DNA of 64,000 nt, taken from Glycera tridactyla. Its lineage: Eukaryota. The position numbers and the translations under genes were made by a program. Below the pieces are notes generated by a model. That model was not told where the DNA came from, made no database searches, and saw only the letters and a list, made by a program, of their open reading frames with translations. The stretch covers positions 20,212,001 through 20,276,000 of the forward strand of contig OZ286476.1 in the NCBI GenBank assembly GCA_965644265.1, read 5' to 3'. The first letter of the stretch is position 1. Every line of letters starts with the position of its first letter. Below, one piece after another: positions 2,395 to 64,000 of the stretch.

Positions 2395-2664
2395 AAACCC
2401 CAACAACCATCACTGTACCCCTCAAGGACAAAGTAGTAACTGAGGGTGATGCAGTGACTCTTGAGTGTGAAGTCTCCAAACCTAACAAGAAAGCTGTGTG
2501 GTACAAGAATGGTATTGAGATCCCTGAGACTGATCAGCATTTCAAGATTATTGTCCTGGAGAAGGTTCACAAGATTGTGATTGATAAATCAGTACTTGAT
2601 GACCAGGCAGAATATACCATCAAGGTTGGGGAAGAAACATCCACCTGTAATCTTACAGTCAATC
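2395..2664 (+). CDS. Ig exon 1 (ETPTTITVPLKD...TCNLTVN), 270 nt, phase 1-1
   Basis: tttgcag acceptor, C|gtaagt donor, I-set motifs. Confidence 0.93.
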
Positions 2665-3141
2665 GTAAGTAGCAATTTCCTGTGTGTTCATGATGGTACT
2701 TAAGTCCTTCTCCTGCTAATCTGCTGTTTGTATACTTTTGGTGATTATTGAGTACAATTGTAATGTGTTTTCTCCCTCTTTGATGAAAGATCAGAAGTAT
2801 ATTTGAGAAAATGGTAATAAGGGAGCTTAGCAGGTGTAGGGGCGTGTCGGTAATTAGCCCAAATAGGTAAATAGACCCTTGTTGCTGTGGTGTGACCCTG
2901 ATATATTTCATACCTCAATGATTTCTGTATACACTCTGTGAGAAAGTTTTATTTATTATCAACAGTATTTTGAATATTATTTTCTATAGAACAGTTCCTC
3001 TTCTACATCTAGTCTCTTATTTATTATGAATTATCATACTATGCTGAATTTATTTTCACTAGGTTCTGCTGGTGGCATTTTTTTTTACCCTGTCTCAAGC
3101 CATCAGGATTTTGACTCTCTTGTTTGTTTCCTTCCCCTTAG

Positions 3142-3411
3142 CAATTCCTAAGACCTTCATCACCCCACTGACAGACATCACAATCCCCGAGGGTCAGACT
3201 GCAACATTTGAAGTTGAGGTATCTGAGACTGTCAAGGAGGTCATGTGGTTCAGAGCTGGTAAGAAGATTCTCAAGTCTGATAAGCGTGCTGTGATGACAG
3301 TAGAGGGACGTATTCATCGCTTGATCATCAAAGATGCTGTAGTCTCTGATTCCACAGAGATCACAGCTAAAGCCAATAAGGACAGCACAGCTGGAAAATT
3401 GACAGTTACAG
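3142..3411 (+). CDS. Ig exon 2 (AIPKTFITPL...GKLTVT), 270 nt
   Basis: cccttag acceptor, G|gtaaga donor. Confidence 0.93.
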
Positions 3412-4034: not shown

Positions 4035-4313
4035 AGATCCCATTGACCTTCCTCACTCCACTTAAGGATGTCACCATCCCTGAGGGTGAAACTGCCGTCT
4101 TTGAGTGTGAAGTCTCCAATCCCAAACAACCTGTCACCTGGTCGCGCAATGGCAAAAAGATTCTCAAATCAGACAAGCGCGCAGTGTTCACAGTAGATGG
4201 TGCAATCCATAGATTAACAATCAAGGATGCAAAGGTTGAGGATATGGCCGAGTTTACAGCTACTTTTGGCAAGGAAACCACTACTGCCAAATTAGTTGTA
4301 GAAAAGCCCAAAG
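4035..4313 (+). CDS. Ig exon A1 (EIPLTF...VEKPK), 279 nt
   Basis: tttcag acceptor, G|gtttgt donor. Confidence 0.92.
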
Positions 4314-4894
4314 GTTTGTGTCTCCTGTATTCTTTTTGTTCTCTGCAAATGCAAATTTGCTGTTGGCACTCTTGCCTCTCTAAGTGCCATCAAAATGCTT
4401 GATCTTTTTTCTCAGAACATCTCTACTTTCATTGAAACATCTCTCCCTTTGCACACCCACTCTCCTCCCACAGACAGTCTACTTTATTTGTTTAGGGATC
4501 ACCTATTCTCAGTTGATTATCATTCCCATCGAGAGTGGTGGGTTTGAACAACAGATGTCACTTTTTTGGCTACTTGGAAGTCCTCAAATTCTGGTTTGAT
4601 CATATCTCTAATGAAGTATAATATTAAATCATCCACTTCTATCTGAATTTCGAATTTGAGAACCATCTGAAAAGTGGGCCCATGACCTTCTGGATACAAA
4701 TCATTCATGGCAATCGCTTTTCAGTTTGTTGGATTTCATGTAAAAATGATACTATAGGTAACAAATCTTGTCAAAGCACCTCTCAGTAAATGGATAGGAA
4801 AATCAGGAAAGGAATCATATATTAGAGAATGAATTATATGATCATAATATGTGTGTGCATTGACCAGTTTTCTTGTCATCTCTAAAACTTTCAG

Positions 4895-5164
4895 AGGAAC
4901 CAGCCAAGTTCATTTCTCCTCTCAAAGACGTAACCACACCTGAAGGTCCCACAATCACATTTGAATGTGAAGTGTCGAAGACAGGACTGACTGTGGAGTG
5001 GTTGCGTAATGGAAAGAAGATCTTGAAATCAGACAAACGTGCCACCATCACCGTCGATGGTACCAAGCACATTTTGACCATCAAAGACTGTGTGGTTGCT
5101 GACACAGCAGAGTTCACTGCCAAACTTCCAGAGGATCAGACTGTTGGCAAACTCACTGTCACAG
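4895..5164 (+). CDS. Ig exon B1 (EEPAKF...GKLTVT), 270 nt
   Basis: tttcag acceptor, G|gtcagt donor. Confidence 0.92.
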
Positions 5165-5530
5165 GTCAGTTGACAGCATTGAAGAATTCGGAATTAAGTT
5201 GTATGTCTAGCATGCCTAACATTTGTATTCATGACTGATGTTGTATCGTCAGATTCAATCGCATTACTTATTTTATTTAGTTTCTTGTTTTGCATTATGG
5301 CTTGATACAATTTGATGGTGATTTGTCGAATGCAATCTATTTTGTGCACAAGCACAAGTTGAAATTGGGCATTCTACATGTTGTCAGGATGTCGTATCGA
5401 TGATATCATACATAAATGTGATAGGAGTCATGAACAATAACTTTCCCATTTTGATTGGATGGGTATCTCTGTGAATCACTTGAGGTATGAATTGGGCAAT
5501 ATATATCTCACAAATAGTGACTAAAATTGT

Positions 5531-6111
5531 TTTGTCACCATATGGGAAGTTCAGCATGGTGCTACATGTCGATTTCTCAGTATATCAGTGAAAAGATGAT
5601 CTTGGCATGATTCACTGTTGTAACATTCTATTTGCAAATGCAAAGTTTATTTGGCAAGTGCCGGAAATCTGTTAGTAATTGTCACATCAGGCTTGAATTG
5701 AAAATGTATCGATCTTCTAAAATGTCATGAGAATTGAATCTGGGCATCTGGTCTGGAAGAATTCTTCGTTGCATATGGTGTCAGTTGCTTGGGAGAGTGC
5801 TTTCAAGGGTTACCAACAGATAAAGAATTAATTTGTCACCATATGGGAAGTTGAGCATGTTGCTCCTTGTCAATTCCTCAGTATATCAGTGAAAAAATGA
5901 TCTTGACATGATTCACTGTTGTCACATTTAATTTGCAAATGCAAAGTTTATTTGGCAAGTGCCAGAACTCTGTTAGTTATTGTCACATCAGGCTTGAATT
6001 GAAAATGCATCGATCTTCTAAAATGTCATGGGCATCTGGTCTGGCAAAATTCTTTGTTGCATATGGTGTCAGTTGCCCCGGAGAGTGCTTTCAAAGGTTA
6101 CCAACAGATAA
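5531..6111 (+). repeat. Intronic tandem duplication, two ~290-bp copies
   Basis: tttgtcaccatatgggaagtt...ttaccaacagataa at 5531-5823 and 5832-6111. Confidence 0.9.
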
Positions 6112-6984
6112 CAAAAAATGTGTAGAAACATCAGTTACCATCAAACCACTTTGAGCTGATGGCAGGTGGTCAAGACATTTTGAGTTGATGACTTCTTTAG
6201 ACTCAGGCTCACTTCCAAACTGTTTTCACCAGTGCTTTTTCTGTGTCCTCTACTGTGATCGTTTCATCCATGTTCATCTGATCTTCTGCACTTACTTTAT
6301 GGTGATGCCTTTACACTATTAGTTATCTTAGATATGTTTTTGCTGGACTGATCTGCTTCTATGTCAGTTTGGAAAATCTAAGTACTGCTTCTTTAGATTC
6401 TTTTACTTTTGTTCATTCGTTTTTACACTCAGCAGCTTTATTTTCTTTGGCGCATGTTTTGTGTGTAAAGACACATGAATGTATTTATTTGAAGATGCTT
6501 CTCTTAGTCATATTATTTGCTGGACTGTTCTGCTTCTTCAGTAATTTGCAGGATTGGGAATTATGTGTTCAGTTGATTGTTTCCTTTTGCTCACTCCTTC
6601 TTACAATCAGTGACATGCATAATTATAACATTTAGCCTTCTGAATTATCATATATGCTTATTACTTTGTGATCTGTTGGTAAACATCTTGATAGCTTGTA
6701 TAAATTGTGTATTGAATTCTATTCTCATCTCATGCTTCTAGTGGATTTCTTCCATTTGCAGATTGCCAATATTTTCAAAAATACAAGTGTTGATCCATAG
6801 GCTGCAATGCTTACTCATAATTTGTGGTCACTTAACTGTCAAAAAGTGCATGGTTACCATAGATTATATTTCCAGCTTGGATCATATTTTTATGTTTCTG
6901 TTGTTGGTATGGAAAATAGGGAGTATATATGATTGTGAGTGTGAATACAATCCAAATGCCAATCAATGTATCATACTTTTGCAG

Positions 6985-7263
6985 AGATTCCATTGACCTT
7001 CCTCACTCCACTCAAGGATGTCACCATCCCTGAGGGTGAAACTGCCGTCTTTGAGTGTGAAGTCTCCAATCCCAAACAACCTGTCACCTGGTCGCGCAAT
7101 GGCAAAAAGATTCTAAAATCAGACAAGCGCGCAGTGTTCACAGTAGACGGTGCAATCCATAGATTGACAATCAAGGATGCAAAGGTTGAGGATATGGCCG
7201 AGTTCACAGCTACTTTTGGCAAGGAGACTACTTCTGCCAAATTAGTTGTAGAAAAGCCCAAAG
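6985..7263 (+). CDS. Ig exon A2, 279 nt
   Basis: ttgcag acceptor, G|gtttgt donor; near copy of A1. Confidence 0.92.
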
Positions 7264-7667
7264 GTTTGTTTGACTTGAATTCTCCATGTTCTGTGCACAT
7301 GCTTTGAAACTCTTGGTTATCTGGTTGATATTTTGTACCATCAAAGTTCTGATGTTTCTATTGAATATGCATAGCGTTTCATCCTCTGCTCAGAATCACA
7401 ACAATTGGATTTGCGCATAAGTCATCATTCATTAATTGTAAATCATGTTGAAATGATTTGTCATAATTTCTCGGTAATGTTTGATGATTGGAATTTAGTT
7501 GTATGCTTTCTCGGCTATTCAGTTCTGAATTATACATTGATTGATCATCACCTAAAGGACAATGGCTTTCCCATTCCTACTATCTGTCTAGAGAATATCT
7601 GTCCATATTGCCTGAGATGAATGTTTGCATATATCAGTACAATTCTACCCAATTTCCTCGTTTCCAG

Positions 7668-7937
7668 AAGAACCAGCCAAGTTCATTTCACCTCTCAAGG
7701 ATGTAACCACACCTGAAGGTCCCACAATCACATTTGAATGTGAAGTGTCAAAAACAGGACTGACCGTGGAGTGGTTGCGTAATGGAAAGAAGATCCTGAA
7801 ATCAGACAAACGTGCCACCATCACCGTTGATGGTACCAAGCACATTTTGACCATCAAAGACTGTGTAGTTGCTGACACAGCAGAGTTCACTGCCAAATTG
7901 CCAGAGGATAAAACTGTTGGCAAACTCACTGTCACAG
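7668..7937 (+). CDS. Ig exon B2, 270 nt
   Basis: ttccag acceptor, G|gtcagt donor. Confidence 0.92.
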
Positions 7938-9298
7938 GTCAGTTGACAGCATGGAAGAATGGAATGCGATAGTATGTCATGTATATGCTGAATATATTTG
8001 AGATGTTCCTGCTGATGCTTGTCAGTGATTTATTTTAGTCATTGACATTGTTTGCTCATCAGTTCTGTTCTGCATCCATTAAGATTACATGACGCATGCT
8101 GGAATGATTCAATTAGATATCACATGCTAATTGAAATCATCTATTCTATATCAGTGAAATTAGCTCTTCCCATGAAACACTGAAACACCTTACTTTGATA
8201 ATTGAGTGATTTGGTGAAAATATATATATGTTTCATAATACACAGATGATTTGAATCAAGTAAATAGCAACCAAATGGTATTGCTTTTCAGGATCATTTA
8301 TTCTTTTTCATGGTTGAACATAGAATTTCCATTCTTGAACATGCTTTCAGAAATCTGTCCAAAATATTTTTGACTCAAACTATAATTTGCCTTTGAACAC
8401 AGCTGTGATCATCCTGAATCTTTGGACTTTCCAATTATCTCATCTTCGATATAGCCACATTGTAGAATTACTGTGGATTTCATGAATCCATGGAATGCTG
8501 ATCATCTTAACATTGTTATACTCATGTTTCATTTTTACATCAGAATCGTATTGGTGTATCTGTATTGGTGCCTCTTATTGGTCTTACCTGACCGTTGTTA
8601 CTGCACCAATGGATTATGATGTTTCTTCTAGTTCTGTCACTTGAATGGCTTGATGGGTACTGCTCATGTTTTGTGAATATTGTTCAGCGCTTACTTATTT
8701 CAGTTTAGATAAGTTGTATTAACTTTCAGCTGATTTTCTGTTGTGATTTCTATAATGTTGTTTCACTAAAACATGTTGACTATAACATTCAGAGATTTCA
8801 GCATGATACTTTTCTTTCCGGTCACTTGCGACTGCCTTGTATGAGATAGCTGCATAATTTCAATGTTTGTCCATTTCATCCTACAGAAAAATGTTGTGCT
8901 TTGTTTTGAAACTGGTATATGCGCATCTTCCACCAGTTTCTTTTTGGATGTTCTTTGATGTATGTTGAAGCATTGTGTAGAATGTACTCATATATCATTT
9001 CCCATATCTTTTCATCAAGTAGCACATTTCATCATTTGTCAATAGACTCACTAATTTGCTATCTATCACTCAATGGTGAATTACACATGTAGTTGTTGTG
9101 TCCAGCCATATTACTTTCTGTTTTCTATTATTTCATCAGATAATTCAGTTCAGATTTATCACCAAATCGGGCCAAACCATTAATTGGAAGATACTTTTTT
9201 ACTTCCGCCTCAATACTGGTATAATTGAGTTTATGAATATCACTTTCACTGTGTGAGTGTGTGATTCTAAATGTTTGTATTGTCTGTCCCCCTTCCAG

Positions 9299-9577
9299 AA
9301 ATTCCATTGACCTTCCTCACTCCGCTCAAGGACATTACCATCCCTGAAGGTGAAACTGCTGTCTTTGAGTGTGAAGTCTCCAACCCCAAAGAACCTGTCA
9401 CCTGGTCGCGCAATGGCAAAAAGATTTTCAAATCAGACAAGCGAGCTGTTTTCACTGTAGAAGGTGCAATCCATAGATTGACAATCAAGGATGCAAAGGT
9501 TGAGGATATGGCTGAGTTCACTGCTGTATTTGGCAAGGAAAAGACCACTGCCAAACTGGTGGTTGAGAAGCCGAAAG
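9299..9577 (+). CDS. Ig exon A3, 279 nt
   Basis: ttccag acceptor, G|gtttgt donor. Confidence 0.92.
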
Positions 9578-10018
9578 GTTTGTTGTTGCTTGTTCTTGGT
9601 GGATTTATTTCGAGAATGCTGGATATGAACAGTTCCAAGAGTAATATCCAGAATCAGATACGGTTATTATTTCTACTGATCAATAAGTTCCCAATATATA
9701 CAGTACTTCAGCAGAAGCTACTCTTCAGATGATGACTTAATATCCAAGGATGTATAGAATGTATGAGTTTGCTGGTCAACAACATTTAGGATGATTTCAT
9801 ATTGTATTTCTCATACCTCTATAACAGATAAATCACTGTAGTATGCTATATAATGGACCTATTCATTGGGCTGGTCGATATATACCACATCAGAATTAGT
9901 ACCAGTCAAATAGTATATTTTTTAGGTGGGAACATATAATTGATCTTTTTAATTGAGTTAGGTATCTAAGCACCACTCACTGCATATACATACAACATTA
10001 TTATGTTCATACTTGTAG

Positions 10019-10288
10019 AGGAGCCTGTGAAGTTCATCACCCCTCTCAAGGACATTTCTACCCCAGAAGGTCCAACTATTACATTTGAGTGTGAGGTCTC
10101 AAAACCAGGTGTGCCTGTGACATGGTTCCGCAACGGAAAGAAGATTATGAAATCTGATAAGCGAGCAACCATCATAGTTGATGGAACCAAACATTTCCTA
10201 ACCATCAAAGACTGTGTGGTTGCTGACACTGCTGAATTCAGTGCCAAACTTCCAGAAGATCAGACTGTTGGCAAACTTACTGTCACAG
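10019..10288 (+). CDS. Ig exon B3, 270 nt
   Basis: ttgtag acceptor, G|gtcagt donor. Confidence 0.92.
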
Positions 10289-11610
10289 GTCAGTTGACAG
10301 CATGCATCTGCAAAACTATTTATTCTATGCTAATTCTTGCTGCTATCTCAGTCTTTCTTCTCTTCATCGAATTCTGAACTTACTTCTCAGGTTTGATGCT
10401 ATGCATTGTTCTGAAGGTCACTACAGGCCATTAATATTTTTCTCTAACCAAATATGAATATACCTCATCCATATCGGCAATAATTTGAATAATGTGTTAA
10501 TCTTTCCATCATATTGATGATGTTTTACTAGATAATCTATGAACCAACTTCATGTCATGAATGAGCTTCTGCCATGGCTAAACAAATGGCTTTATTATGG
10601 AGTCATGGCAGTATCAATTCATTGTGGTCATCTAGTGTTGGAACAAGTTTAACCAACTTGATATTTCATGTTGTCACTTGATTTATATATCATACTCCAT
10701 GCTGCACATGAAATAATAAGGCTGGCCTGCGAACCATATGTGAGATATAGTTTACCTACCCCAATTTTTGGCCCCATGCACAGATGTATAATCATTGCTG
10801 AACTATCATTATGAAATTCACCATGGCAGTTATTGAAGAAGTCCCTATTTCACAAATTCTTTGGATTTCTACTATCCATGATTCCATTATTCAATACATG
10901 GTGTGGGAAAGATTCTCATGAATTAAACATAAAAGTACAAATCACATATATTCAAATTGAGGGAATAATACTTCTCGTAGGTATAACATTTCTGTTCGCT
11001 TCTACCTGCTTCTCTGAGGTATTGCCAGCTCTGTCTTCTCTTCTCTTCTCTTCTCTTCTCTTGCTGTTGCTCTCATATTCTGTTTACAATTGCTTGGTAG
11101 ATGATTCTTCTCTCTGTTTTTGCTGCAGCTCACATGATTGTATGCAGTCTCTCTGCAGGCATTGCTAATCCTATTATTATTATTGGTGTGGGAGGTTCCA
11201 TGCATATGAAGGATTCTGTAGTGTATGGAAGATATTGCAGTTGGCCTTCTGTATTCAGAATTATCTTAGCTAGCATTCATCAAGTCCTCACAAGATATTG
11301 GATGTATTCGATAGGTCATAAGTAGTATTTCTACTCACATTTTATACATGAATTCATTGGTTGTCGGTGCATATGATGGACCGGTAACAGGTGTTGATTT
11401 CAGTGTGGTAACTTGAAGTTTCCAAACTATTGCACTGTTTTGAAAAGCTATGTATAGCATTTATTGCTTCTTGTCACTATAGTGAATTATCATACAATGT
11501 ACTGGGGCTATTATGAGGTTCCCACATTGTGAAATGATCCCTTAAAGTTGATATAGTACATGATATATCAAAGTTGTCTAATTGTTTGGATTAATTCCTG
11601 ACCTTTGCAG

Positions 11611-11889
11611 AGATCCCATTGACCTTCCTTACACCACTCAAGGACATTACCATCCCTGAAGGTGAAACTGCCATCTTTGAGTGTGAGGTTTCCAATCCCA
11701 AACAGCCTGTTACCTGGTCCCGCAATGGTAAAAAGATTCTCAAGTCTGACCGCCGTGCAGTGTTTTCTGTGGAGGGAGCTATTCACAGATTGACAATCAA
11801 GGATGCCAAAGTTGAAGATATAGCCGAATTCACTGCCACATTTGGCAAGGAAAAAACCACAGCTAAACTTGTTGTGGAGAAGCCAAAAG
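11611..11889 (+). CDS. Ig exon A4, 279 nt
   Basis: ttgcag acceptor, G|gtttgt donor. Confidence 0.92.
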
Positions 11890-12310
11890 GTTTGTCATAG
11901 TTGGCTCGTGCATGAAAAGTTTGCATCAAATATGCCAGGAATTTGTTTAACAATTTTCTCTTCTTTTAACACCATGACAATTTCAATCAGGAACTACAGG
12001 CAGTTGGAATTTGTCATCCACAAACCAATGTAGGAGGTATCTATGAGATCTCAAGAATATCAATAGCACCACCATACAACTGTCAACCAGGTAAGCCTGG
12101 ATATCCTGTCATCTATACCATCAGCTATATATTTGTGTAATATGATTGGATCTGCCATTGATGAAATATTTTTCTATTGGTATAAATAGATGGAATAGGA
12201 TGACTATCACCTGAATTTTAATGATACTATGATATCAGATGTGAAACTCCTTGCTTGTGTGAGTATGCGTCAGGCATTGCTTTATCTGACTGGGGGCTTC
12301 ATATTTTCAG

Positions 12311-12580
12311 AGGAGCCTGTGAAATTCATCACTCCATTGAAGGATATCACCACCCCGGAAGGTCCCACAGTGACACTTGAATGTGAAGTATCAAAGCCTG
12401 GTGTCACGGTCACGTGGTTCAGGAATGGAAAGAAGGTGCTAAAGTCAGACAGGCGTGCCACCATCTCAGTTGATGGCACCAAGCATTTCTTGACAATAAA
12501 GGACTGTGTGGTTGCTGATACAGCAGAATTCACTGTCAAAATACCAGAAGACCAGACTATTGGCAAATTAAGTGTCACAG
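12311..12580 (+). CDS. Ig exon B4, 270 nt
   Basis: tttcag acceptor, G|gtcagt donor. Confidence 0.92.
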
Positions 12581-14846
12581 GTCAGTCGACAGCATGTTTG
12601 AGCAGAAAAATTCTGTGTGCATTGGCCGATAATTCTTTATCGACCAATCTTTCATAATGTGGATATCGCTTCTATTCTTTCATCCATCAACATGAATGTG
12701 ATGGCTCTGTCAAATCAGCAATGTGCTCATTTCCAGAAATGGAGGCTGATGTCTGCCAAATTCCTATTGATTTCAAGACCTGAAACACCAACTGTTTCAA
12801 GGAGTGATATGGCAAACATTTTTTCTGGGAATGAACACATTTTAGTATCTGGAGCTTTGTGATGCATCAAAACTTCTTACTGCATTTTGAATCATTCTGA
12901 TATAATTGATAATTTCTTAACTGGTTACAACATAGCTGAAAACTTTGCATTCACTTGCATGACTAGACTCTTTTCCTGCAGACTCAAGCTAATTGTTAAG
13001 ATGAATATCTTGACACCCTCCTTTGGTGTAGATACCTAAGGTTTGGTATATTGAAAAGGGTGCATGAGGAATGAGGCCCATTATCAAATAATCCCATTAA
13101 TTGCTTGTTATTCACATTCATTTCACATACATACCTCGTCTACTAGATTGTCTTCTATATCAATGGGGATTTTCTCCTATCCTTTTATTACATACATCAC
13201 CATATGCTGCATTAAAAGAATTGATGATACCTACAGAAATGCGTGATTGATGAAATCACATGATTGATTCACAAGTAGGTTCGGCTAAATTTATTGCATT
13301 TTTGAACCTAACCACACCTCATCCATGATGCTCTAAGGCATTTGGAAGCTTGATTGTTGCATCTCTTCAATTTTAGGTGGAATTCAAATTTTCATCCGGC
13401 ATTTATGTAACTGTAGATGCTCTTTGAATTCTACCTACCATGGTGGCAGAACACCATGAGAGAGCATATTTGAATGCTTAGCACTGTCATGGGATCTTTT
13501 TGATGGGATCATCCAGTGCCGATCACAAAGCCCCTGCTTCCTATGTCTTAGCAAATATTAGGAAATGTTGAGATTTCCTTGCTTACTCGATGTATGCCGG
13601 GAACAATTTCACATTATTGGCGTTGGAAATAGAACAGTTACACTACCCAATGTCTTATATGCGCTATGTGCATTCGTTTGATAAGCATTTTGTTCATACT
13701 TTTTTCAGCTGTTTTGAAGAATGTACATTCCTTGTACATTGGCTATGTATTTGGTGCTCACCTTCTTGTCTTTTGTGGGCTAAAGTTGGCTTGATATCTC
13801 TCTGCAACATGGTGCTCTCTGGAATGGCCAGTGGATATTGTACTTTGTGCTCTGCTTTGAATTTCATGGTTTCAACTCAGTTTGTGATTTTTGTATTGAA
13901 TGTTTGTCTCAACGCAGGTGCAATTTTCAAGCCTTGTCCCACCATTGATCAGAATGAGATCAGCATTTTGAAATTGAAATATATCTCAGTGGGTTGAGAT
14001 GAGGGTTGAAATTGTACACTAGAATTTGGGAATGATGCCACATCTTTGCCTGATGGGAATGATGCCACATTTTTGCCTATCTATATGTGATCATCTCATG
14101 CTTTTGATCATTTCGATGTCTCATTTGCAAGAAACAGAGTCCGTGCTATTCAAAATAGCAATTTATACGTCGCATTCCTGAGTATCATAACAGTACTCTT
14201 TCACCAAAAAATATACAGATGAGCTGTGGCTTTGGTGGATTGCATCAAGGTACCCACAATTCTTTCAGCATTGAGGCATGATTGAGGAATGATTGTGATT
14301 TGGGGATTACCAAAAATATATCATTAGGCTATAATATTATACAAGGATTTACTGTACTGTGTTCTTTTCTAATTGTCTCTGAAAGAGTGGTTTATCATTG
14401 TAGTATTGAGTCCTATTATGGTTCTGATTCATAGCAGAATCATATGCATTTGACATCACCTCATTATCTTGAGATACGAAACTGTTATTCCACCCTGTCA
14501 ATGTGGCTAGTGAGGCTGTATCAATCAGTCTTGAGTCAGTATTGTGGATTCATATTCACACAAAAATTCAATTTAATGGTATAGTTCTTTCTCAAGGTTC
14601 ATGAGAATGTTGATGGTGAATCAGGTATAATGCCAATTAGGCCGTTGAATTTGTCTTCAAAACCCTTACTTCTGATGATCATTGTTCAGTTTCCTGTGTA
14701 TTCTTCATCGACCAGTTCAGTATGTCTCTTTCAGAAACCACCTGTCGCCAAGGCAGCTTTTTCTCATAGTTATGCTGTTCTGACATCCACTCAGTCTATG
14801 TTTCTTTATATCCACTCTATCATGTCTATGTGTGTGACCTTTGCAG

Positions 14847-15125
14847 AGGCAGCCTTGACATTCCTCACCCCTCTGAAGGACCTTACCATCCCAGAAGGGG
14901 AAACTGCTGTCTTTGAGTGTGAAGTCTCCAATCCCAAGGAGCCAGTCACCTGGTCACGCAATGGAAAAAAGATCCTGAAATCAGACAAGCGTGCTGTATT
15001 CACAGTCGAAGGATCTATCCATAGACTAACAATCAAGGATGCTAAAGTAGATGACACTGCTGAGTTCACAGCTACATTTGGTAAAGAGACAACTACAGCT
15101 AAGCTGACTGTTGAAAAGCCAAAAG
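14847..15125 (+). CDS. Ig exon A5, 279 nt
   Basis: ttgcag acceptor, G|gtttgt donor. Confidence 0.92.
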
Positions 15126-15414
15126 GTTTGTTGATACATTTTCCCTGGTTTTTTGTTCTTGTGTTGTCTGGTCATTTGTGATTTAAGCAATGTATGGAAT
15201 TCCATTATTTAACATTTTCTTTGGATTGATCATTTTTGGAAAAGTGAATTCATGCCAGTCTGAAGCCATATTATCTGGATATCTATAGATGATTTGTTGT
15301 GCACTCTGTTCTGGGTGATATTCTTGATTGGGTGAAAGCGTTGTTAAAGTCAGATTCATGTACACAAGCAATTGTGCAACTGATATTCCATGAATATCAT
15401 TCATTGTCTTGTAG

Positions 15415-15684
15415 AAGAGCCAGTGAAGTTCACATCACCACTGAAGGATGTGACAACTCCAGAGGGTCCAACCATTACCTTTGAATGTGAAGTGTCCAAA
15501 CCCGGTCAGACTGTTGAATGGTTGAGGAATGGCAAAAAGATCCTGAAATCTGACAAACGTGCGACAATCACTGTTGATGGTACCAAGCACATTTTGACCA
15601 TCAAAGACTGTGTAGTTGCTGACACAGCAGAGTTCACTGCCAAATTACCAGAGGACCAAACAGTTGGCAAACTCACTGTGACAG
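15415..15684 (+). CDS. Ig exon B5, 270 nt
   Basis: ttgtag acceptor, G|gtcagt donor. Confidence 0.92.
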
Positions 15685-16917
15685 GTCAGTTGATATTATG
15701 CACTTGATTACTGCGCTTACTTCAGTTTGCATTAGTTGCTTCTTATGTATCTATCTTGATGACTGTGAAGGCCATCACTTTGGATATTTCACCATAAAGA
15801 GTGTTTTTTTGCATACAATTTTGGTTGCAATTATGATTTGAGGCAATCCTTTGCTGCAAAGAACTCCAGTGCATCATTGCTTTCTCTTTTTTGAGTTATT
15901 TATGCTAGCCATTTGTCTCAGATGCTCTGCCTATGCTGTGACCTATGCCTAAACTTGGAATTATATTCCACTCAGCAATTTGTAAGTTCTGTTCCCCGCT
16001 GGGCTTCCATGTTGTACATTTTTAGCTTATTGTAGCTTGTCATGCTATGTTCATATTCATTTGCATTTCTGTTTCATGCTTTCTGTCTTTGTATGGTTGT
16101 CCTTTTACTTCTGCATCTTCAGTTACTGCAGTTTGTCAGCTTTGACTATATTTTCAATGTATGCTTATTTCCTTTCTGCTGAACTTAGGTGCTTATTTTA
16201 GGTTGTATCATTATTTATTGCAACTTCTGTTGCTTCAACTTTTGGTTGCTATTGAAGGACTTTTATTTTTGGCTGAACCTATGTGTTTGATTCCATTGAC
16301 ATCAAGTTTTCGCAATTTTGCTTGGCTCAGCTTTGTGTTTGACTGTAAAAAGTCATGTGATTCGTGTCACATCTGCTGTGTTCATATCTGTATCTGTCTG
16401 CTTATGTGTTTCACATTGATTATGATCCAAGGTATCATAATATTTGGCTGTTCGGTCAGATTACATTCACTCTGCCATATATGTATTAATTCGTCAACCA
16501 AGCTCACATTGTTGTCTTCAGTTTTGCACTCCATTAGTTCATTGTATCCACATTTGACTTAACTACCTTGGTTTTCAATTGTATCTCACCATCAACTCAG
16601 GTATCATTCAAAAAAGCATTTTGATCATAGTTGGATGTGATCGTATCATTTCTCTTCAATGCTGTGGTTTATTTAAGAGTTATGCATAAAAACATAGATT
16701 TCAAGTCAGAGGACCATATACTTCTTTATCTATATAGAGAAGCAATGTTTTCTCCAGCCTCTTAGTAATGTTTACATGAAGCAACAACTTGTTACTATGG
16801 CAGGGATAGTGATATTGTGTGCATTTTTGCTCTAGAAGTATTCCTCCATTCAATAGGTATTACTTGTTAGATGATTTTCCCCCATTTGACCCCCATGTCA
16901 TCATTCCTGAATTCCAG

Positions 16918-17196
16918 AAGCTGCCTTGACCTTCCTAACACCCCTCAAGGATATTACCATCCCAGAAGGTGAAACTGCTGTCTTTGAGTGTGAAGTCTCC
17001 AATCCCAAACAACCTGTTACCTGGTCACGCAATGGCAAGAAGATCCTGAAATCAGACAAGCGCGCTGTATTTACTGTTGACGGATCCATCCATCGACTGA
17101 CTATCAAGGATGCAAAGGTTGATGATACTGCTGAATTCACAGCAACCTTCGGCAAAGAAACTTCAACTGCTAAGTTGACTGTTGAAAAGCCAAAAG
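16918..17196 (+). CDS. Ig exon A6, 279 nt
   Basis: ttccag acceptor, G|gtgcgt donor. Confidence 0.92.
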
Positions 17197-17526
17197 GTGC
17201 GTCACAGTTCTCATGTTTGCATGTACTTTATATTACACCAGTCAGTGTCACAGGTTTCTTTGTTCTGTTCATCCTTGTTGAATCACCCAATGGTAATCAT
17301 GTCACCACCCGGTAATTCTTCATGGTTATAAACTCATATCATCCCAGTCAAGGATCAGAATCGTTCCACTGAATATTTGGTTCAGAACAAGTGAATGAGA
17401 CTATTTTTGTTTCTATACATTTCTATCATCACAATCATCTTATAAGATGATGAATAGTATCACAATTCTGCAGTATCCAAAAACAGTTTCACTTGACTGA
17501 AAGATAATATTTTCTTCTTCAAACAG

Positions 17527-18664: not shown

Positions 18665-18666
<2 letters not shown>

Positions 18667-18731
<65 letters not shown>

Positions 18732-48442: not shown

Positions 48443-48612
48443 GAATGGGGACAGTGGTAGGACAAGTCACTTTCCATAGATAAGAAGCTGATCATGTTAG
48501 AGTAAACTTGCTAGTCTATATCATATCCTGAGTAGTGATCATCCTTGAAATCTCATTCAGATGAATACGCTGTCTAGACATCACTCCCATCATCTATTCT
48601 TCCATATTTTAG

Positions 48613-48882: not shown

Positions 48883-49294
48883 GTGTGTTGTGGTGATAAA
48901 GCATTCCTAATAAACCCGAATGATTAATAATCAGGATGCCATTCGTATCTATTCCTGACTTAAAGTTTCTATATCTCTTGGGAGATTTCATCTCATCGGC
49001 ACGAAGAATAGCAGTTAATAAAGACTGAATGATGATTCAGATAGCAGTTAATTTGACAGAGATAATCATAGACATATATAGCCAGAGATGATATTTTTGG
49101 CAGATAGTTTTTTGGATGACATTTACCAGTTCATTTATCATCTATATGACCTGTCATCTTTTCAATCAATATTAGAATAATGAGATCATTATGATCTTTG
49201 AAAATATATGCTTTAATCTTTGTGACAGTATGGGTATTCTCCATAATTGCCATGGAAGGGATTACATTCAAGGATGCTTTATTCATTTTTCTAG

Positions 49295-49564
49295 AAGCCC
49301 CAGTGACTTTCATTAGACCACTTGAGGATGTCACCACGACTGAGGATCAGACAGCCACCTTTGAGTGTGAGGTGTCAAAACCAGGCCAACAAGTAACCTG
49401 GTTCAAAAATGGGAAGGAGATAACTAAACCCGATAAGAACATGAAAATCTCACGTGACGGTGCGGTTCACCGCCTCACGATCACAAACACTTCACCCTCT
49501 GATGCCGCTGAATTCACAGCAACTGTTGCTGATGACAAAACTGATGGCAAACTCAAAGTAGAAG
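49295..49564 (+). CDS. Ig exon (EAPVTFIRPL...KLKVE), 270 nt
   Basis: ttctag acceptor, G|gtgcgt donor. Confidence 0.92.
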
Positions 49565-50675: not shown

Positions 50676-50957
50676 CAAGACATAGCTCATCCAGACGTTC
50701 ATTCACAAAAGGGTTGCCTCAGCGTACATTCTCCAGGGGTGGGGGTGTAGCCGTCTTACGGGTTGAGGTCAGTGATCCGGACATTCCCGTAGTCTGGTTC
50801 AAGGATGGTACTCCGATCACACATGGGGGTCAATATGAACTGAAGGACGAACACACACTTCATACCTTTAGCATCATTGATGTCACTCCTGCTGACGGTG
50901 GCGAGTACATGGCTAAAGCTGCTGATGACGTCACAATGACGACATTAGTGGTTGAAG
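50676..50957 (+). CDS. Atypical Ig exon (ARHSSSRRSFTKGLPQR...TLVVE), 282 nt, no B-strand Cys
   Basis: ttttttcag phase-1 acceptor, G|gtatga donor, WFKDG and D-x-G-E-Y motifs. Confidence 0.8.
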
Positions 50958-54027: not shown

Positions 54028-54300
54028 AGGAGAAAACCATCTTCACCAAGCCACTAACTGAGCAGACCGTTGTCGAGAAGGAAACTGCCACCTTCGAGTG
54101 CGAGGTTTCCAAACCCAAGAAGGTTGTTAAGTGGTACCGTAACGGTAAGGAGATCAGCAAAACTGACAAACGCTACGAGATCATCGTTGATGGATGCAAA
54201 CATCTTATCAAGGTCAAAAACTGCACCCTTGAGGACACCGATGCAGAGTTTACGGCCAAGATCGAAGATGCTGAGACCTCAGCCCCTCTCAAGGTCGAAG
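54028..54300 (+). CDS. Ig exon (EEKTIF...PLKVE), 273 nt
   Basis: ttacag acceptor, G|gtgtgt donor. Confidence 0.92.
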
Positions 54301-55816: not shown

Positions 55817-55947
55817 AGGAGCCAGTTGCTTTCTTGAAGCCCCTTCAGGAGAAGAAGTGCAAGGAGCATGAGGAAGTCTTCTTCGAATGCACGCTCAGCA
55901 AGCCAAACAAGAAGGTCACGTGGTTCAAGAACGGACAGGAGATCACG
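55817..55947 (+). CDS. N-terminal half of a split Ig domain (EEPVAF...WFKNGQEIT), 131 nt, phase 1-0
   Basis: ttccag acceptor, ACG|gtcagt donor; Ig similarity stops at the donor. Confidence 0.88.
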
Positions 55948-57763: not shown

Positions 57764-57899
57764 GTTGATGAGAGGTTTACCATCATCGCCGACAAGCAGA
57801 AGCACAAACTGGTCATCAAGGATGCTCATCTGGACGACACCGCTGAATACACCATTAAGGTGGAGGAGATTCAGTCATCTGCCAAGCTGACAGTCGAAG
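57764..57899 (+). CDS. C-terminal half of the split Ig domain (VDERFTIIADKQKH...KLTVE), 136 nt, phase 0-1; absent from ORF track
   Basis: ttgcag acceptor, G|gtgagt donor; hand translation completes the 55817 half to an 89-codon I-set domain. Confidence 0.88.
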
Positions 57900-58745: not shown

Positions 58746-59012
58746 AGCTGCCCTTGTCAATCGTCACGCCACTGAAGGATATCCGCTGCATGGAGAAAGA
58801 TCGCGTCACATTCGTGTGCGAATTGAGCAAAGCCGATATCAAGGTCAAGTGGATGAAGAAGGGCAAAGAGATCAAGCCTGGCAAGGACTTTGAGATTACC
58901 TCAGATGGTACCAAGTACTTCCTGACGATCCCCTCCACCAGTCTGAACGACGTCTCTGAGTACACAATTGTAGCGGAGAAGCTCAAATCTTCAGCCAATC
59001 TTATTGTTGATG
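58746..59012 (+). CDS. Ig exon (ELPLSIVTPL...NLIVD), 267 nt
   Basis: ttgcag acceptor, G|gtaagt donor. Confidence 0.92.
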
Positions 59013-60063
59013 GTAAGTCAGCTCATCTATTTTTTACATCACTGCATGTCGTGAACAATATTTAATTCAGATTACATCTTACACTTAATTGCCTGCTTCG
59101 AATATTACCTAGGTGTCCACAGTTTGCTGAAGGCTTTCAAACAGTTTTGTAGGATGTTTGAGCAGACTTGAATTTCAAATTTGCCAGGTCATGCCCTACT
59201 AGGTGATCCTACAGTTAAGGATCATGATGTAGCCTTGCTGGAGGATTTTAAATTGATTTGAGGCAAATTAATTTGGATGTATAATCATCAGTGAATTACT
59301 CAGAGCTGACATGTTCCACAACCTGGTGTATAATACCACGTGTTTAAAAAGGAATACTTCCATTTCCATGACAATTGAGGCTGACTAAAAAGCAGGGCCT
59401 TCAATTTATTGAGCCTGTTTGCCAAATTGTGCACCATTCTTTTGATGTTTTTTGAGAATCTTTTTGAAGACATACAACACAGAGTTAATATACTACTGGC
59501 AAATGAAGTACTTCTGCCTCACCTAATAGTCCACCATCTGTTGTCAAATTGCATGATCAGCTTTCTTTTATGTTTTCTGTAGCATGAGTTTGATGTAGTT
59601 TGAGTACCAGTGCATGTTACTTTATCATCTCTTTGAATTGTGATCTCTTGAAAACTAATTCAGAGGTTTTCATTATTCTCGAAGATCAATGCATATTGCT
59701 TTGACCTTTAATCTCCTGCCCCCCTCAGGTGAGGTATGTGAGGCTCAGCATCTTCTGAATGAAGATGTAAATCTTCCAAGTCAATCAATCAATCAATCAA
59801 TTTATCAGTAAATGATGATCGTATGGCATGATTTCACAGAGATGATATTGTTTGAAGTGTTTCTAATATTTTCATGCATGTGTTACTACTTGTTTCCTGG
59901 GATTGCGTTTTTTCTCTGAGGATCTTGATATTCCGGCAGTTGATTCTGCCAAGATATCCCATTCTCGAAGAAAATGTGAAATCTCAACATTCAAAGGCTA
60001 GCAAGGGTAATCATAGTGAGTTGATTGTTTGGATTTTGCTAACAGCATGCTTTGATATTGCAG

Positions 60064-63000
60064 GACCTGTTCCAGCTCAGACCAGTGTTATTGTTCCACG
60101 CGTGTTCTGCACTAATCCTATACATGACCTTGAAGATGACCCTGACCTTGGGAGGAGGGAAGTTTCGACGAGGAAAACAAAGCATTCAGCTGATTCACAA
60201 ACACAAACCGAAACTCCAACGCTCACAGCAGAATCAGAGGGTCAGGAAGATCTCCCTGAGACAACAATCTCTGTTCTTACCTTCTTTGATAATAGACTTG
60301 AAGAGTGCATAACTGATATCACTAGTTCAGATTTAGAGAGTCCAGTATTTGATGAAAATGTATCAGCAGGTGAATTTGATTGCTACAGCGTGGATGAATC
60401 AATCGTGAGCAATAAAAGCACTGTATCGGGTGATGGGATTCGAGAAAAACGTGATTCAGGCTATCGTTCCCTCAGTTTCCAAAGTCACGGTTCTGAAGAG
60501 GACTCATTTACAAATGGCAATAATAGCAACAATACGCAGAATATCGGTGAATTGTTTGAACACAGACTTGATGATATGATGCCAGACCAACCAGAACACT
60601 TATTGAGTCATTCGGATAATGAATCAGGATTTGTTACAGACAGTCATAGCCTTGAAAATAGTACAGTTTGTTCAGAATCATTACCAAGTGACACTTCTCA
60701 ACCTAATGATGTAGATATATGTGGTGCGGATAAGCAAAGTATCTCAATCAGCAGTCCTTTCCATGATCAAGATGAACTTCCACACTTGCAAAATAGGAAT
60801 TTGAGCCACAATCAGTCTGAATTTATCATTGCGACAGCTTATAATGATGAGTATGAGGCCATTATAATTGAGACCAGTTCAGATTGTGAAGAAATATCAG
60901 AAGAGCCTAATTCTCAAACTGAAATCATAACTGTTGATGTTGACGATGATGATGTCCAGAGTGAGACATCAACAGAAACTGAGGAAGTGAGTGAGTTACA
61001 GGATGGATTCATGATTTCTGACACAATCCCTGAGATTATGGTCACATCATGTGATACACCACATGACATACTGCATGATCTGTCACATGATCGATCACAT
61101 GACACGTCACATGACCTGTCACATGACCCATCATATCCATCACATGACACACCACATGACTCACCAGGTGATGGTGTACTTGCTGCATCGCAAGTTCAAT
61201 ATGAAGAACCTCATGGCCCATCGACTGGTTCGTGTGAGGATTCCAGGATAGAAGATGCTGAAATTTCAGTTGATGATGATATACTCCCTGTGAGTTTTTC
61301 TTATTTGGCCAGTCCTCCGAAGGATACTACAATCCTGCAGGATAGTGTGATCATCTCAGAGGATGAAACAAATCCATCTTCTCAGATGCAATCAGAACGC
61401 TTAGACGTTGTACAGGAAATTCTGCCTGATTCAAGGAAAGATGTTGTATCATCAGTGCTATCTGATGAATTGGAAATATATGCTTCCCAACTGAGTAGTT
61501 CCATCACTGAGTCTGCAGTGCATGAAACCCACATTATATCTTCATACATGATTGAGTCAAATTTGCATGAGAGAGACAGAAAACCTGTAGATAGCTTTGA
61601 TGATTGTTGCAATGGTAGAGAGGATGTCCCCATTTCTGTAGATGTTGCCATTGACAATTCAGTCAGTTTTGAAGCCACCCTTTCTGGAGATGGAGAGGTG
61701 GAATCCTCATCTGATAATCGAGAAAATTTATTCAGTAAGTCACAAGAACATGAATCGGATCAAGATAATACAGAGGAAAGCCAATTCGATCACTCCCTTT
61801 TAGAATCATCTAGTTTGGACACTGTAGAAGAAAGCCCACATGATGTGGATTTCCAGAGTCAGTCAAAAGAACCTAATTATGAGCAAGAACACATTGAAGT
61901 AATCCAAAAGGTTAGTCATTTGGTAGAATCATCCCATGACTGTGAGAATGTTCAGAAGAAAATACAGCAATCAGAGTCATCAAGTTTGTCAGAAGAGCCA
62001 GAATCTGAGCAAGAGGTGACCCGTAAAGATGACTCTTTTGAGGTAATAGCCAATGTTTCTGACAAGATATATGCGGCCGCACACGGGGTAGACTCATTTG
62101 TTGATCCTGAGGAGGCTGCGTATGAGCAAGATATGGTACAGGATGATGATGAACAAATAGAAGCGTCATTAGATGCAATTAATGAGTACCTTCTCACAGA
62201 ACATACTAGGGCTATCCAAATTAAGGAAAAGCAATCTCATGATCTGGAAATTAACCAGGTAGAAATCACACTTCCATCTGATGTACCAAACAGGCTGCCT
62301 AATAATGGTTTTGGACAAAGTTCAGATGAGATGATTGAGGAGTCTGAAGCCTTCGTGAAATCAAGTTCTGAACTTGTTGATTTACCAGGGGGAACATGTA
62401 GATCAGACGACATTAGTCATCCATGCAAGACTGAGTTTGAGCTCACTGCGAGTGATGCAAGCAATGGGAATGATTGCTTGGAGCCGTCCCCATATGACCT
62501 TGATGAAGGACAAGAAGAGACATTAGAATCCTTGAGCCAAGATGATGTTCATGAAGTCACTCAGGGAGATAGCTATCTAGTGGAATCATCCACTGGTGCA
62601 CTTGAAGTACCAGAAATAGCTGATGAATTAGAGACTTTGAGACAGAGAAAAGAATCTGATCTCGAGCCACTGAAACCGGAGACGGATGTACTCGTAGATA
62701 CACCTATTGATTCTGATAATGTAGAAAAGAAAGCATATAAATTCAATTCCTTGCCAGAATCACATGAGATTTATACTCCAGAAGGTTTTGAGAATCAGAG
62801 TGGTGAGATTCCGATGGAATCATCTTTGAGTTTTGAGAATATACAAGAAAGACCGTCTCTACAGTCTGTTCCGCATAATGATTCTGGAGATGAAACTGAT
62901 GAATTTCAAGAGCAGCTCTCCCTCAATGTTGAGACTGTGTATGAGAAAAAAATTTGGACTGATCCTGTGACTCTGACAAAAGAATCTCATTCTGAACATA

Positions 63001-64000
63001 TTGTTGGTGAAGTGATCCAATCCAATGAGTCCCAAGTTGAATCAGCTCTTTGTTTGGTTGATGCACAAGAGAAGATTGCTGAATCAGATTTACTGAGCCA
63101 GTCTGAAAATCCTGAATCTGAGCTTTGTTTCCATGAAATACAAGAAGGTACTCAGGTGGCATCATATTCTTGTTTAGATAAAGTGCAAGAAGGGTCAGAC
63201 AATTTCAGACGACCCTCAGAGTCTGATTTATTTCAGGATGTTGATGAGGGGGGACAGGAGGCTTCGATTGATTCTGTTCCTGATATTGATGATGGAAAAC
63301 AGGAGGCTGAGCCTTCATCAGGAACACCTTCTGAATTTGAAGTACAACGGAGAGCATCTGAATCTAATGACCTCAGCCAACCTGAAGAGCTTCATCCTGT
63401 AGAGACCTCTGAAGAGATCAGTCAGATGGGTGATAAACTGGTAGAATCATCTTCTACTTTAAGAAATACACATGAAGTCACGCCTATATTTGACTCTGTT
63501 AACCTGATAAAAGAGTCAGATTCGAATGTTGAGATTGAGCAAGGTACTGCTGAGGCAACTTTGAAAGGTGACACCCTCATAGAATTATCCCACCATCCTG
63601 TTGATGAACAAATAAATGCATATGAATTTGACTCTCAGCATGGAAATGAAGAGATTGCCTCCAAGCATGATGCTGAGGTTGTGATCCAGGAAACTCCTGT
63701 ATCATCAGAAACTTCTCCTGAGTCACATTCTTCTGGAAGTGTGACAGAAACTTGTGATGGAGAAACACAGCAAGAAATGGGCTGGTCCAGAGAAGGCATA
63801 TCTTCAAGTCATATCTTGAAGCAGTCAGATGAGTTGGTCTTAGAAGAGGGTGATGAATATTTGAAGCAGTCAAATAACTTAGTTTCAGTAGAGGGTGATG
63901 AAGTTGATGAGTATTTGAAGCAGTCAAATAATTTGGTTTCAGAAGAGGGTGATGTGTATCTGACTGAAGTAGGTGATGCATTGTCTGATTTTGATGACGT
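60064..64000 (+). CDS. Second giant exon, E/S/D-rich disordered segment, >=3937 nt (>1310 aa), open to window end; absent from ORF track
   Basis: gatattgcag phase-1 acceptor. Hand translation (G)GA CCT GTT CCA...GAT TTT GAT GAC GT found no stop, and the frame closes arithmetically at 64000. Confidence 0.85.

What the first reader, a model, noticed from the sequence alone, without database searches (positions are those of the whole stretch)
2395..64000. Fully plug-and-play giant elastic-protein cassette: almost any exon subset splices in frame
Seen: 41 of 43 complete exons are phase 1-1 with lengths divisible by 3. All but the first phase-1 exon end in G, so a skip keeps the frame and usually rebuilds a Glu or Asp at the junction. 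Known: vertebrate titin tunes passive stiffness by skipping symmetric I-band Ig and PEVK exons. The short F-G turn without an N-x-x-G motif and the missing F-strand Cys resemble titin I91(I27)-type domains. Inference: an invertebrate titin-class spring with a very large combinatorial isoform space.
Basis: partly seen in the sequence, partly recalled or inferred. Interest (0 to 1): 0.75.

Follow-up and report, generated by a model that had tools for sequence, protein, structure and literature searches.

The report
In-frame Ig exon array, titin-like gene
This 62-kb stretch of a giant titin-like muscle gene of an invertebrate has 43 exons, 41 of which could be dropped without breaking the reading frame, a design already known from vertebrate titin; the RNA at hand shows the exons joined one after another and gives only hints that some are skipped.

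Summary
I rebuilt 43 complete + strand exons (2395-59012) and an open giant exon from 60064. Forty-one are phase 1-1 with lengths divisible by 3. Two (55817-55947, 57764-57899) split one Ig domain with a phase-0 intron. Every exon but the first ends in G. All 861 possible donor-acceptor pairings give a sense codon, 86% Glu or Asp.

Each 267-282-nt exon is one I-set Ig domain of the titin I27 / obscurin / MyBP-C kind: no F-strand Cys, no NxxG, a two-residue F-G turn. The model has pLDDT 94 and TM 0.92 to titin I27. Four acidic, domain-free exons (about 2,770 aa) lie among them.

Spliced RNA contigs from four samples of one study confirm six predicted junctions exactly, all between consecutive exons. 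The one apparent skip (33 to 35) is ambiguous, because exons 33 and 34 share their last 22 letters. Contig breaks and depth steps hint at other partners for exon 35 and, in one sample, exon 36.

So the titin-class spring reading is supported. The "very large combinatorial isoform space" is a capacity, not a shown use. Symmetric exons are standard in TTN (85%), OBSCN and NEB. This is a new member of a known kind. The scan had already noted other parts of this gene.

The parts
2395..2664 (+). Exon 1. Divergent Ig, 270 nt, phase 1-1. The only exon that ends in C.
   Evidence: (I-set E 7e-13)
3142..3411 (+). Exon 2. Ig, 270 nt, phase 1-1.
4035..22350 (+). Exons 3-18, eight A/B pairs. A exons (279 nt) start at 4035, 6985, 9299, 11611, 14847, 16918, 18854 and 21106. 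B exons (270 nt) start at 4895, 7668, 10019, 12311, 15415, 17527, 19544 and 22081. All are phase 1-1 and end in G. Copies show dN/dS of 0.05-0.09 with dS above 1.
   Evidence: Exon 8 and junction 7>8 are seen in RNA.
23865..24131 (+). Exon 19. Ig, 267 nt. A second in-frame acceptor lies at 23859.
25424..28961 (+). Exons 20-23. Four Ig exons of 270 nt each: 25424-25693, 26189-26458, 27825-28094, 28692-28961.
29458..35122 (+). Exons 24-29, three young C/D pairs. Starts at 29458, 30081, 31694, 32481, 34066 and 34853. Each is 270 nt. Copies are 95-97% identical in DNA.
36666..40610 (+). Exon 30. Giant domain-free exon of 3945 nt, phase 1-1. Composition is E 14.5, S 13.4, P 12.2, V 9.0 and about 3% K. 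Net charge is -225.
   Evidence: (no Pfam family)
41657..41905 (+). Exon 31. Acidic non-Ig exon, 249 nt, phase 1-1.
42651..42848 (+). Exon 32. Acidic non-Ig exon, 198 nt, phase 1-1.
44345..49564 (+). Exons 33-38. Six Ig exons of 270 nt: 44345-44614, 45258-45527, 46757-47026, 47731-48000, 48613-48882, 49295-49564.
   Evidence: All five junctions between them are seen in spliced RNA contigs. Exons 35-38 lie in one contig of about 1.9 kb in three runs and on two adjoining contigs in the fourth.
50676..50957 (+). Exon 39. Divergent Ig, 282 nt, with a basic Ser-rich N-terminal extension.
54028..54300 (+). Exon 40. Ig, 273 nt.
   Evidence: A 30-letter loose end of contigs in three runs is unique to this exon.
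55817..55947 (+). Exon 41. First half of a split Ig, 131 nt, phase 1 to 0 (not symmetric).
57764..57899 (+). Exon 42. Second half of the split Ig, 136 nt, phase 0 to 1 (not symmetric).
58746..59012 (+). Exon 43. Ig, 267 nt, phase 1-1.
60064..64000 (+). Exon 44. Second giant acidic domain-free exon with a phase-1 acceptor, open at the window end (at least 1311 aa). Composition is S 14.6, E 13.6 and D 10.3. Net charge is -245. A second in-frame acceptor lies at 60076.

Best explanation
The window holds the tandem-Ig and disordered-spacer ('I-band type') middle of a giant titin-family muscle gene of an invertebrate. It encodes 39 I27-type Ig domains, nearly all one per exon, and about 2,770 residues of very acidic disordered sequence, some 6,300 residues in all. 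The uniform phase 1-1 design most likely arose by repeated tandem duplication of a phase 1-1 Ig exon. New exons fixed inside phase-1 introns also had to be 1-1. One consequence is that any exon, or any block of exons, can be left out with only a Glu or Asp at the seam and whole domains kept. The chain would act as a series spring: straightening of the Ig chain (about 170 nm folded) plus an entropic spring from the acidic segments (about 1 um contour length). The lengths are my inference from general polymer figures. In the RNA available, the exons tested are spliced consecutively. Some regulated block skipping is likely but unproven. Free combinatorial use is unlikely.
For: Exon structure and phases. 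I-set assignment for every Ig exon tested, E 2e-15 to 7e-10. Nearest solved relatives by sequence are titin I9-I11, cMyBP-C and obscurin. The AlphaFold model has pLDDT 93.9 with an F strand at 71-77 and a G strand at 80-88. Fold matches are titin I27, titin I10, obscurin Ig32 and sMyBP-C at TM 0.91-0.95. There is no Cys pair that could form the canonical Ig disulfide (36 of 38 have the B-strand Cys, 0 of 38 the F-strand Cys), which fits an intracellular protein. All copies are intact and under strong purifying selection (dN/dS 0.05-0.09 at dS above 1), so they are translated. The giant exons match no Pfam family and are E/S/P/V-rich. Spliced RNA confirms six junctions. A relative found in a metagenome has a B-type exon with the same 270-nt phase 1-1 design and the same GTCAGT donor. 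Literature: 85% of human TTN exons are symmetric, as are most in OBSCN and NEB (PMC9222585). [quoted passage not shown]
Against: Nothing in the window is unique to titin. The names of the best database matches are split among titin, obscurin, OBSL1 and twitchin-like, with at most 51% identity for a single domain. The disordered exons are Lys-poor and match no PEVK/PPAK model. I could not see the flanks. The Ig-Fn3 super-repeats downstream are known only from earlier unchecked notes. The RNA evidence is contigs only, from one study, over 6 of 62 kb. Muscle expression was not shown.
Confidence: 0.72

Rival explanations
1. One reading: the cassette is used combinatorially, with many different exon subsets spliced in different muscles, giving a very large isoform space.
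For: Any subset is in frame, and the seam residue is Glu or Asp in 86% of pairings. Contigs of exons 35-38 stop 2-15 letters upstream of exon 35 in all four runs. Summed depth on exons 33-34 is roughly a fifth to a half of that on exons 35-38. In run X4 the contig also stops at the exon 36 donor, and exons 37-38 have half the depth.
Against: All six junctions seen join consecutive exons. Exons 35-38 are colinear in all four runs, in one contig in three of them. The single apparent skip, 33>35, has only 20 letters on its short side, and exons 33 and 34 share their last 22 letters. Contig ends and contig depths are weak evidence by the tool's own caveat. Strong purifying selection on every copy fits regular inclusion.
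Confidence: 0.1
2. The exons are strictly constitutive. Phase symmetry is only a by-product of exon duplication, and the Ig part is never alternatively spliced.
For: Only consecutive junctions were seen. Phase 1-1 is inherited by duplication. All copies are conserved.
Against: There are contig breaks at the exon 35 acceptor in all four runs, with a several-fold depth step, and a sample-specific break and depth halving after exon 36 in X4. Known titins in flies and vertebrates do skip such exons (PMC3575840, PMC12063666).
Confidence: 0.2
3. The array belongs to an obscurin/UNC-89-like gene, or another sarcomeric Ig protein, rather than to a titin/sallimus-like gene.
For: The proteins with the most matching domains are vertebrate obscurins (7,265 aa, 61 matched stretches). 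Obscurin Ig domains are among the best sequence and fold matches.
Against: That ranking follows the number of Ig repeats, not closeness; single-domain identity is 32-51% for titin and obscurin alike. To my knowledge the Ig array of vertebrate obscurin has no giant acidic disordered exon inside it, whereas this window has two, plus two small acidic exons. Earlier notes place Ig-Fn3 super-repeats downstream and more spring exons upstream on the same piece. MyBP-C is excluded by size, since there are 39 Ig domains without any Fn3.
Confidence: 0.1

Closest known systems
Vertebrate titin (TTN), differentially spliced I-band tandem-Ig and PEVK region
   Same: It has one I27-type Ig domain per symmetric exon, arrays grown by duplication of multi-exon super-repeats, and disordered spring segments among them. 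Its exons can be skipped in frame: 85% of TTN exons are symmetric (PMC9222585), and skipping occurs between exons 50 and 219 (PMC3575840). Fold match to I27, I10 and I9-I11 is TM 0.92-0.94.
   Different: Single-domain identity is only about 30-51%. Here the super-repeat has two domains (A279/B270, eight times). Neighbouring domains are 52-91% identical. The disordered exons are giant single exons, acidic and Lys-poor, instead of many 28-residue PPAK exons. The vertebrate regulator RBM20 is described as vertebrate-specific (PMC6279932). Skipping has not been shown here.
Drosophila Sallimus (Sls) / arthropod I-connectin / C. elegans TTN-1 (invertebrate I-band titins)
   Same: Each is an invertebrate giant protein with Ig arrays and PEVK-like spring exons. 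In sls the spring exons are removed or kept according to muscle type (PMC12063666).
   Different: From my own knowledge, kettin-type Ig domains of Sls are separated by linkers and are of the classical I-set sequence type. Here the domains are I27-type and directly abutting. No sequence comparison with Sls was made here.
Lophotrochozoan titins as surveyed in PMC12063666 (Fig. 1A text)
   Same: [quoted passage not shown] Earlier notes place this gene in a spiralian, with Ig-Fn3 super-repeats downstream.
   Different: That paper gives domain cartoons only. I found no description of exon phases, of the A/B array or of splicing for any spiralian titin. The organism's identity was not verified here.
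Vertebrate obscurin (OBSCN) Ig array
   Same: It has long runs of single-exon I27-type Ig domains with a high share of symmetric exons (72%, PMC9222585). Obscurins top the list by number of matching domains.
   Different: To my knowledge it has no giant disordered exon inside the array. Its defining RhoGEF and kinase modules cannot be looked for in this window.

Membership tests
Titin/connectin family, I-band (spring) part | Tandem intracellular I-set Ig domains of the sarcomeric (I27-like) type | tested here: met
   Pfam I-set E 2e-15 to 7e-10. PDB sequence hits to titin I9-I11 and I27. Model pLDDT 93.9, TM 0.92 to I27. No cysteine pair that could form the canonical disulfide.
Titin/connectin family, I-band (spring) part | Long disordered P/E/V/K-rich spring segment (PEVK) | tested here: inconclusive
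   Exons 30-32 and 44 match no Pfam family and are E/S/P/V/D-rich. P+E+V+K is 28-48%, but K is only about 3% in exon 30, and the net charges of exons 30 and 44 are -225 and -245. This is PEVK-like in role, not in sequence.
Titin/connectin family, I-band (spring) part | Differential splicing of the spring exons between muscles | tested here: inconclusive
   Only consecutive junctions were seen. Contig breaks and depth steps hint at other partners of exons 35 and 36.
Titin/connectin family, whole protein | [quoted passage not shown] | not testable with these tools
   These lie outside the window. Earlier unchecked notes report (Ig-Ig-Fn3-Fn3-Fn3)x2 repeats 62 kb and 122 kb downstream.
Obscurin/UNC-89 | SH3-DH-PH (RhoGEF) module and obscurin-type kinases | not testable with these tools
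   None was found in the parts of the window scanned. The flanks cannot be read.
Myosin-binding protein C | About 10-11 domains mixing Ig and Fn3 | tested here: not met
   There are 39 Ig domains and no Fn3 in 62 kb.
Symmetric (phase 1-1) one-domain-per-exon Ig gene design | Exon borders at domain borders, both in phase 1, length divisible by 3 | tested here: met
   41 of 43 exons. Six borders are confirmed by RNA. A relative has the same design.

The most novel reading that the evidence does not exclude
Several upstream donors converge on the exon 35 acceptor, so that the main message bypasses a large block of the Ig array and the giant acidic exon, and the block used differs between samples or muscles. 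That would be regulated spring tuning by exon skipping in a spiralian titin, run by something other than RBM20. It would argue that this mode of stiffness control is ancestral to bilaterians or has evolved repeatedly. A further oddity is that the array's neighbouring domains are 60-90% identical and each A/B copy is held almost unchanged by selection, which may point to a periodic binding role besides elasticity.
Probability: 0.3. Interest if true: 0.5.

Novelty: new member of a known kind. Interest (0 to 1): 0.3.

Why it matters
The design principle, symmetric one-domain exons that allow in-frame skipping, is textbook for titin, obscurin and nebulin, so the finding does not change what is known. 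Its value is comparative. Spiralian titins are barely described: a 2025 evolutionary study of connectin/titin contains no mention of annelids, molluscs or other spiralians. That study names it as an open question whether protostomes split one ancestral titin or chordates fused two (PMC12198301). If this Ig/spring region and the Ig-Fn3 region noted downstream prove to be one transcript, and if its exons are skipped by muscle type, the gene would bear on that question. The strong selection on eight near-identical A/B pairs and the high identity between neighbouring domains are also worth a look by people who study misfolding in tandem-repeat proteins.

Tried and rejected
1. The joint 44612>46755 in run X2 looked like a skip of exon 34. 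I rejected it because its short side is 20 letters and exons 33 and 34 share their last 22 letters.

2. The joint 47765>49360 and the loose ends at 49382 and 49385 are contigs of the paralogous exons 8 and 40, laid partly on exons 36 and 38. They are not splice events. They do show that those exons are expressed.

3. The joints at 47273 and 47279 to 48735, and the very high depth at 47100-47299, come from an intronic repeat.

4. Two word searches, with stop-free references of 208 and 156 aa around exons 17 and 36, aimed to find RNA-derived fragments spanning unusual junctions. They returned only three single-exon fragments of relatives from metagenomes and nothing from this species.

5. The exhaustive protein search ranks hits by the number of Ig repeats. 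The names of the 20 hits I looked up do not separate titin from obscurin.

6. The UCUU (RBM20-type) motif is not enriched in the introns: 9.7 per kb against 8.9 per kb expected.

7. The sigma-70 promoter scan of 1-2400 is irrelevant for a eukaryotic gene.

8. Literature searches found no paper on exon structure or splicing of an annelid or other spiralian titin.
Full report
WHAT IS THERE. The window is AT-rich eukaryotic DNA (GC 0.35-0.46, no N). Its + strand carries a long series of short open frames with very similar translations. Using the frames, AG/GT borders and domain homology, I built a table of 43 complete exons from 2395 to 59012, plus an open giant exon from 60064 to the window end.

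Thirty-eight exons of 267-282 nt each encode exactly one Ig domain. One further Ig domain is split by a phase-0 intron into exons 41 (55817-55947) and 42 (57764-57899). Exons 30 (36666-40610, 3945 nt), 31 (249 nt), 32 (198 nt) and 44 (at least 3937 nt) encode domain-free acidic sequence.

Forty-one of the 43 exons are phase 1-1 with lengths divisible by three. Exon 1 ends in C and all the others in G. I tried all 861 ordered donor-acceptor pairs of the phase-1 exons. None gives a stop codon, 692 give Glu and 51 give Asp.

IS IT MORE THAN CHANCE? Formally yes, since a 1-1 exon is 1 in 9. The exons are paralogues, though, so the phase was inherited rather than acquired 41 times. The three unrelated acidic exons are also 1-1. 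That is what one expects for exons that became fixed inside phase-1 introns.

A metagenome contig from a relative (L001) carries a B-type exon that is 75% identical in DNA, with the likeness confined to the exon. It has the same 270-nt phase 1-1 design and the same GTCAGT donor. The design is therefore conserved.

WHAT THE DOMAINS ARE.
- All eight Ig exons scanned match Pfam I-set, with E from 2e-15 to 7e-10. The giant exons match nothing.
- By sequence, the nearest solved structures are titin I9-I11 (5jdd), cardiac MyBP-C and obscurin. Titin I27 is also found.
- An alignment of 32 of the exons shows 64% mean column identity and a consensus with a B-strand Cys in 36 of 38 domains. None has an F-strand Cys or an NxxG motif.
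- The AlphaFold model is confident (pLDDT 93.9). Its F strand (71-77) and G strand (80-88) are joined by a two-residue turn.
- Its best structural matches are sMyBP-C, titin I27 (TM 0.92, rmsd 1.0 A), titin I10 and I9-I11, and obscurin Ig32.

WHICH GENE. The exhaustive protein search found 4,632 relatives. The top of the list is vertebrate obscurin, but only because it has the most Ig repeats. Ranked by single-domain identity, the best hits are these:
- a teleost titin fragment (51%);
- a Lottia gigantea hypothetical protein (47%);
- bird obscurin and a bird titin fragment (46% each);
- an amphioxus protein (45%);
- a lamprey protein (43%);
- a hemichordate protein named 'twitchin-like' (48% over a shorter overlap).

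Domain similarity therefore places the array in the sarcomeric titin/obscurin/MyBP-C class and goes no further.

What points to titin or sallimus is the interleaving with huge disordered segments. Exon 30 is E/S/P/V-rich with net charge -225, and exon 44 is S/E/D-rich with net charge -245. Earlier notes of this scan also place more giant spring exons upstream and (Ig-Ig-Fn3-Fn3-Fn3)x2 super-repeats 62-183 kb downstream, in what they call a spiralian or annelid-like worm. I could not read those flanks, so that part is context, not evidence.

[quoted passage not shown] A 2025 study of titin evolution contains no mention of annelids, molluscs or other spiralians (PMC12198301).

RNA. Four runs of one study (X1-X4, Logan contigs) hold 11-16% of the sampled words of 41600-51000, close to the exonic share. 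I laid them on 44300-50299. They cover the exons and not the introns, apart from two repeats. Their contigs jump the introns at GT..AG, so they are spliced RNA.

The junctions 33>34, 34>35, 35>36, 36>37 and 37>38 are exactly as predicted. Exons 35-38 lie in one contig of about 1.9 kb in three runs and on two adjoining contigs in the fourth. A loose end in X4 joins the unique last eight letters of exon 7 to the start of exon 8. Strings unique to exons 8 and 40 also occur, so those exons are expressed.

The single apparent skip (33>35, run X2) has only 20 letters on its short side. Exons 33 and 34 share their last 22 letters, so it cannot be told from 34>35.

HINTS OF ALTERNATIVE USE (WEAK).
- In all four runs the deep contig of exons 35-38 (depth 25-33; in X4 that of exons 35-36) ends 2-15 letters upstream of exon 35. 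The contigs of exons 33 and 34 are shallower, and summed depth there is roughly a fifth to a half of that on exons 35-38.
- In X4 alone the contig also ends one letter past exon 36, and exons 37-38 have half the depth of exons 35-36.
- Breaks at 2 and 8 letters would fit donors of many upstream exons and of exon 21, respectively. The break after exon 36 would fit exons 40, 41 or 43 as partners.
- An internal promoter, allelic differences or quirks of assembly would explain these patterns as well. The tool itself warns against reading contig depth.

I count this as a lead, not a result.

SELECTION. The eight A copies and eight B copies differ strongly at silent sites (median dS 1.26 and 1.45) but hardly at all in protein (median dN 0.067 and 0.12), giving dN/dS of 0.05 and 0.09. 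Only the pairs 3/5, 4/6 and 12/14 and the C/D triplets are young, with dS of 0.05-0.2. Every copy is therefore kept as working coding sequence, which argues that all are translated somewhere. It also argues that most of the likeness is due to purifying selection rather than recent homogenisation.

MECHANISM (INFERRED). The product is a chain of 39 abutting Ig beads, about 170 nm when folded. Added to it are about 2,770 disordered, strongly acidic residues, about 1 um of contour. Together they would act as a two-stage spring between filament-bound parts of the protein, as in titin. Because exon borders coincide with domain borders in one phase, the cell can shorten or lengthen the spring by leaving out exons. 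Vertebrate titin does this (PMC3575840), as does fly sls (PMC12063666). Whether and where this animal does so remains open.

VERDICT. The 'titin-class spring' reading is supported at the level of domain class and architecture. The 'very large combinatorial isoform space' is unproven and, given only consecutive junctions, unlikely in its strong form. The design is standard for giant sarcomeric genes: 85% of TTN exons, 72% of OBSCN exons and 97% of NEB exons are symmetric (PMC9222585). This is a new member of a known kind.

LIMITS. RNA could be laid on only 6 of 62 kb, once, and only as contigs.

Noticed in passing
window 4035-22350 (exons 3-18): The A and B copies are old at silent sites (median dS 1.26 and 1.45) yet nearly identical as protein (dN/dS 0.05 and 0.09). 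Only pairs 3/5, 4/6 and 12/14 are young. Such tight selection on eight two-domain units suggests a specific, repeated binding role, not just elasticity.
   Followed up: partly
window 2395-54300, all adjacent Ig exons: Neighbouring domains are 52-91% identical in 32 of 35 adjacent pairs (mean over all 35 pairs 61%; exons 33/34 reach 91%). From my own knowledge of work on tandem-domain misfolding, neighbours in vertebrate titin are usually below about 40% identical.
   Followed up: partly
window, 33 of 38 Ig exons, e.g. 4895-5164: A basic stretch of the form W-x-R-N-G-K-K-I-x-K-S-D-K-R (the C, C' and D strand region) is kept almost unchanged in 33 of 38 domains, next to giant exons with net charges of -225 and -245.
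   Followed up: no
window, donors of 28 of 43 exons, e.g. 5165, 44615, 45528: The donor sites are unusual, with a pyrimidine at +3 (GTCAGT 20 times, GTTTGT 5 times, others 3 times). RNA shows that GTCAGT donors are used, and a relative has the same donor (L001).
   Followed up: partly
window 46757 (exon 35 acceptor) and 48000 (exon 36 donor): RNA contigs break at these two splice sites and the depth steps there: in all four runs at exon 35, and only in run X4 after exon 36. Possible causes are alternative partners, an internal promoter or quirks of assembly.
   Followed up: partly
window 47107-47280 and 44883-45099: These are intronic repeat elements with high RNA word depth (139-251 and about 10-14). 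Different flanking sequences appear in the contigs, so they are probably transposon fragments expressed from other loci. Weaker copies of the first lie at 58216-58270 and 58479-58560.
   Followed up: partly
window 50676-50750 (start of exon 39): This Ig domain has a basic, Ser-rich N-terminal extension containing an RRxS-like site (SRRSF), a possible kinase target.
   Followed up: no
window 23859/23865 and 60064/60076: Each place has two in-frame candidate acceptors, 6 and 12 nt apart, for exon 19 and exon 44. Either choice keeps phase 1.
   Followed up: no
window 18600-18700 and about 24430-24500: GT/CA dinucleotide microsatellites lie in introns.
   Followed up: no
L001 414-683 (ENA metagenome ERZ23486739): This environmental metagenome contig holds a B-type Ig exon of a related animal. 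It is 80% identical in protein to exon 8, and DNA likeness is confined to the exon.
   Followed up: yes
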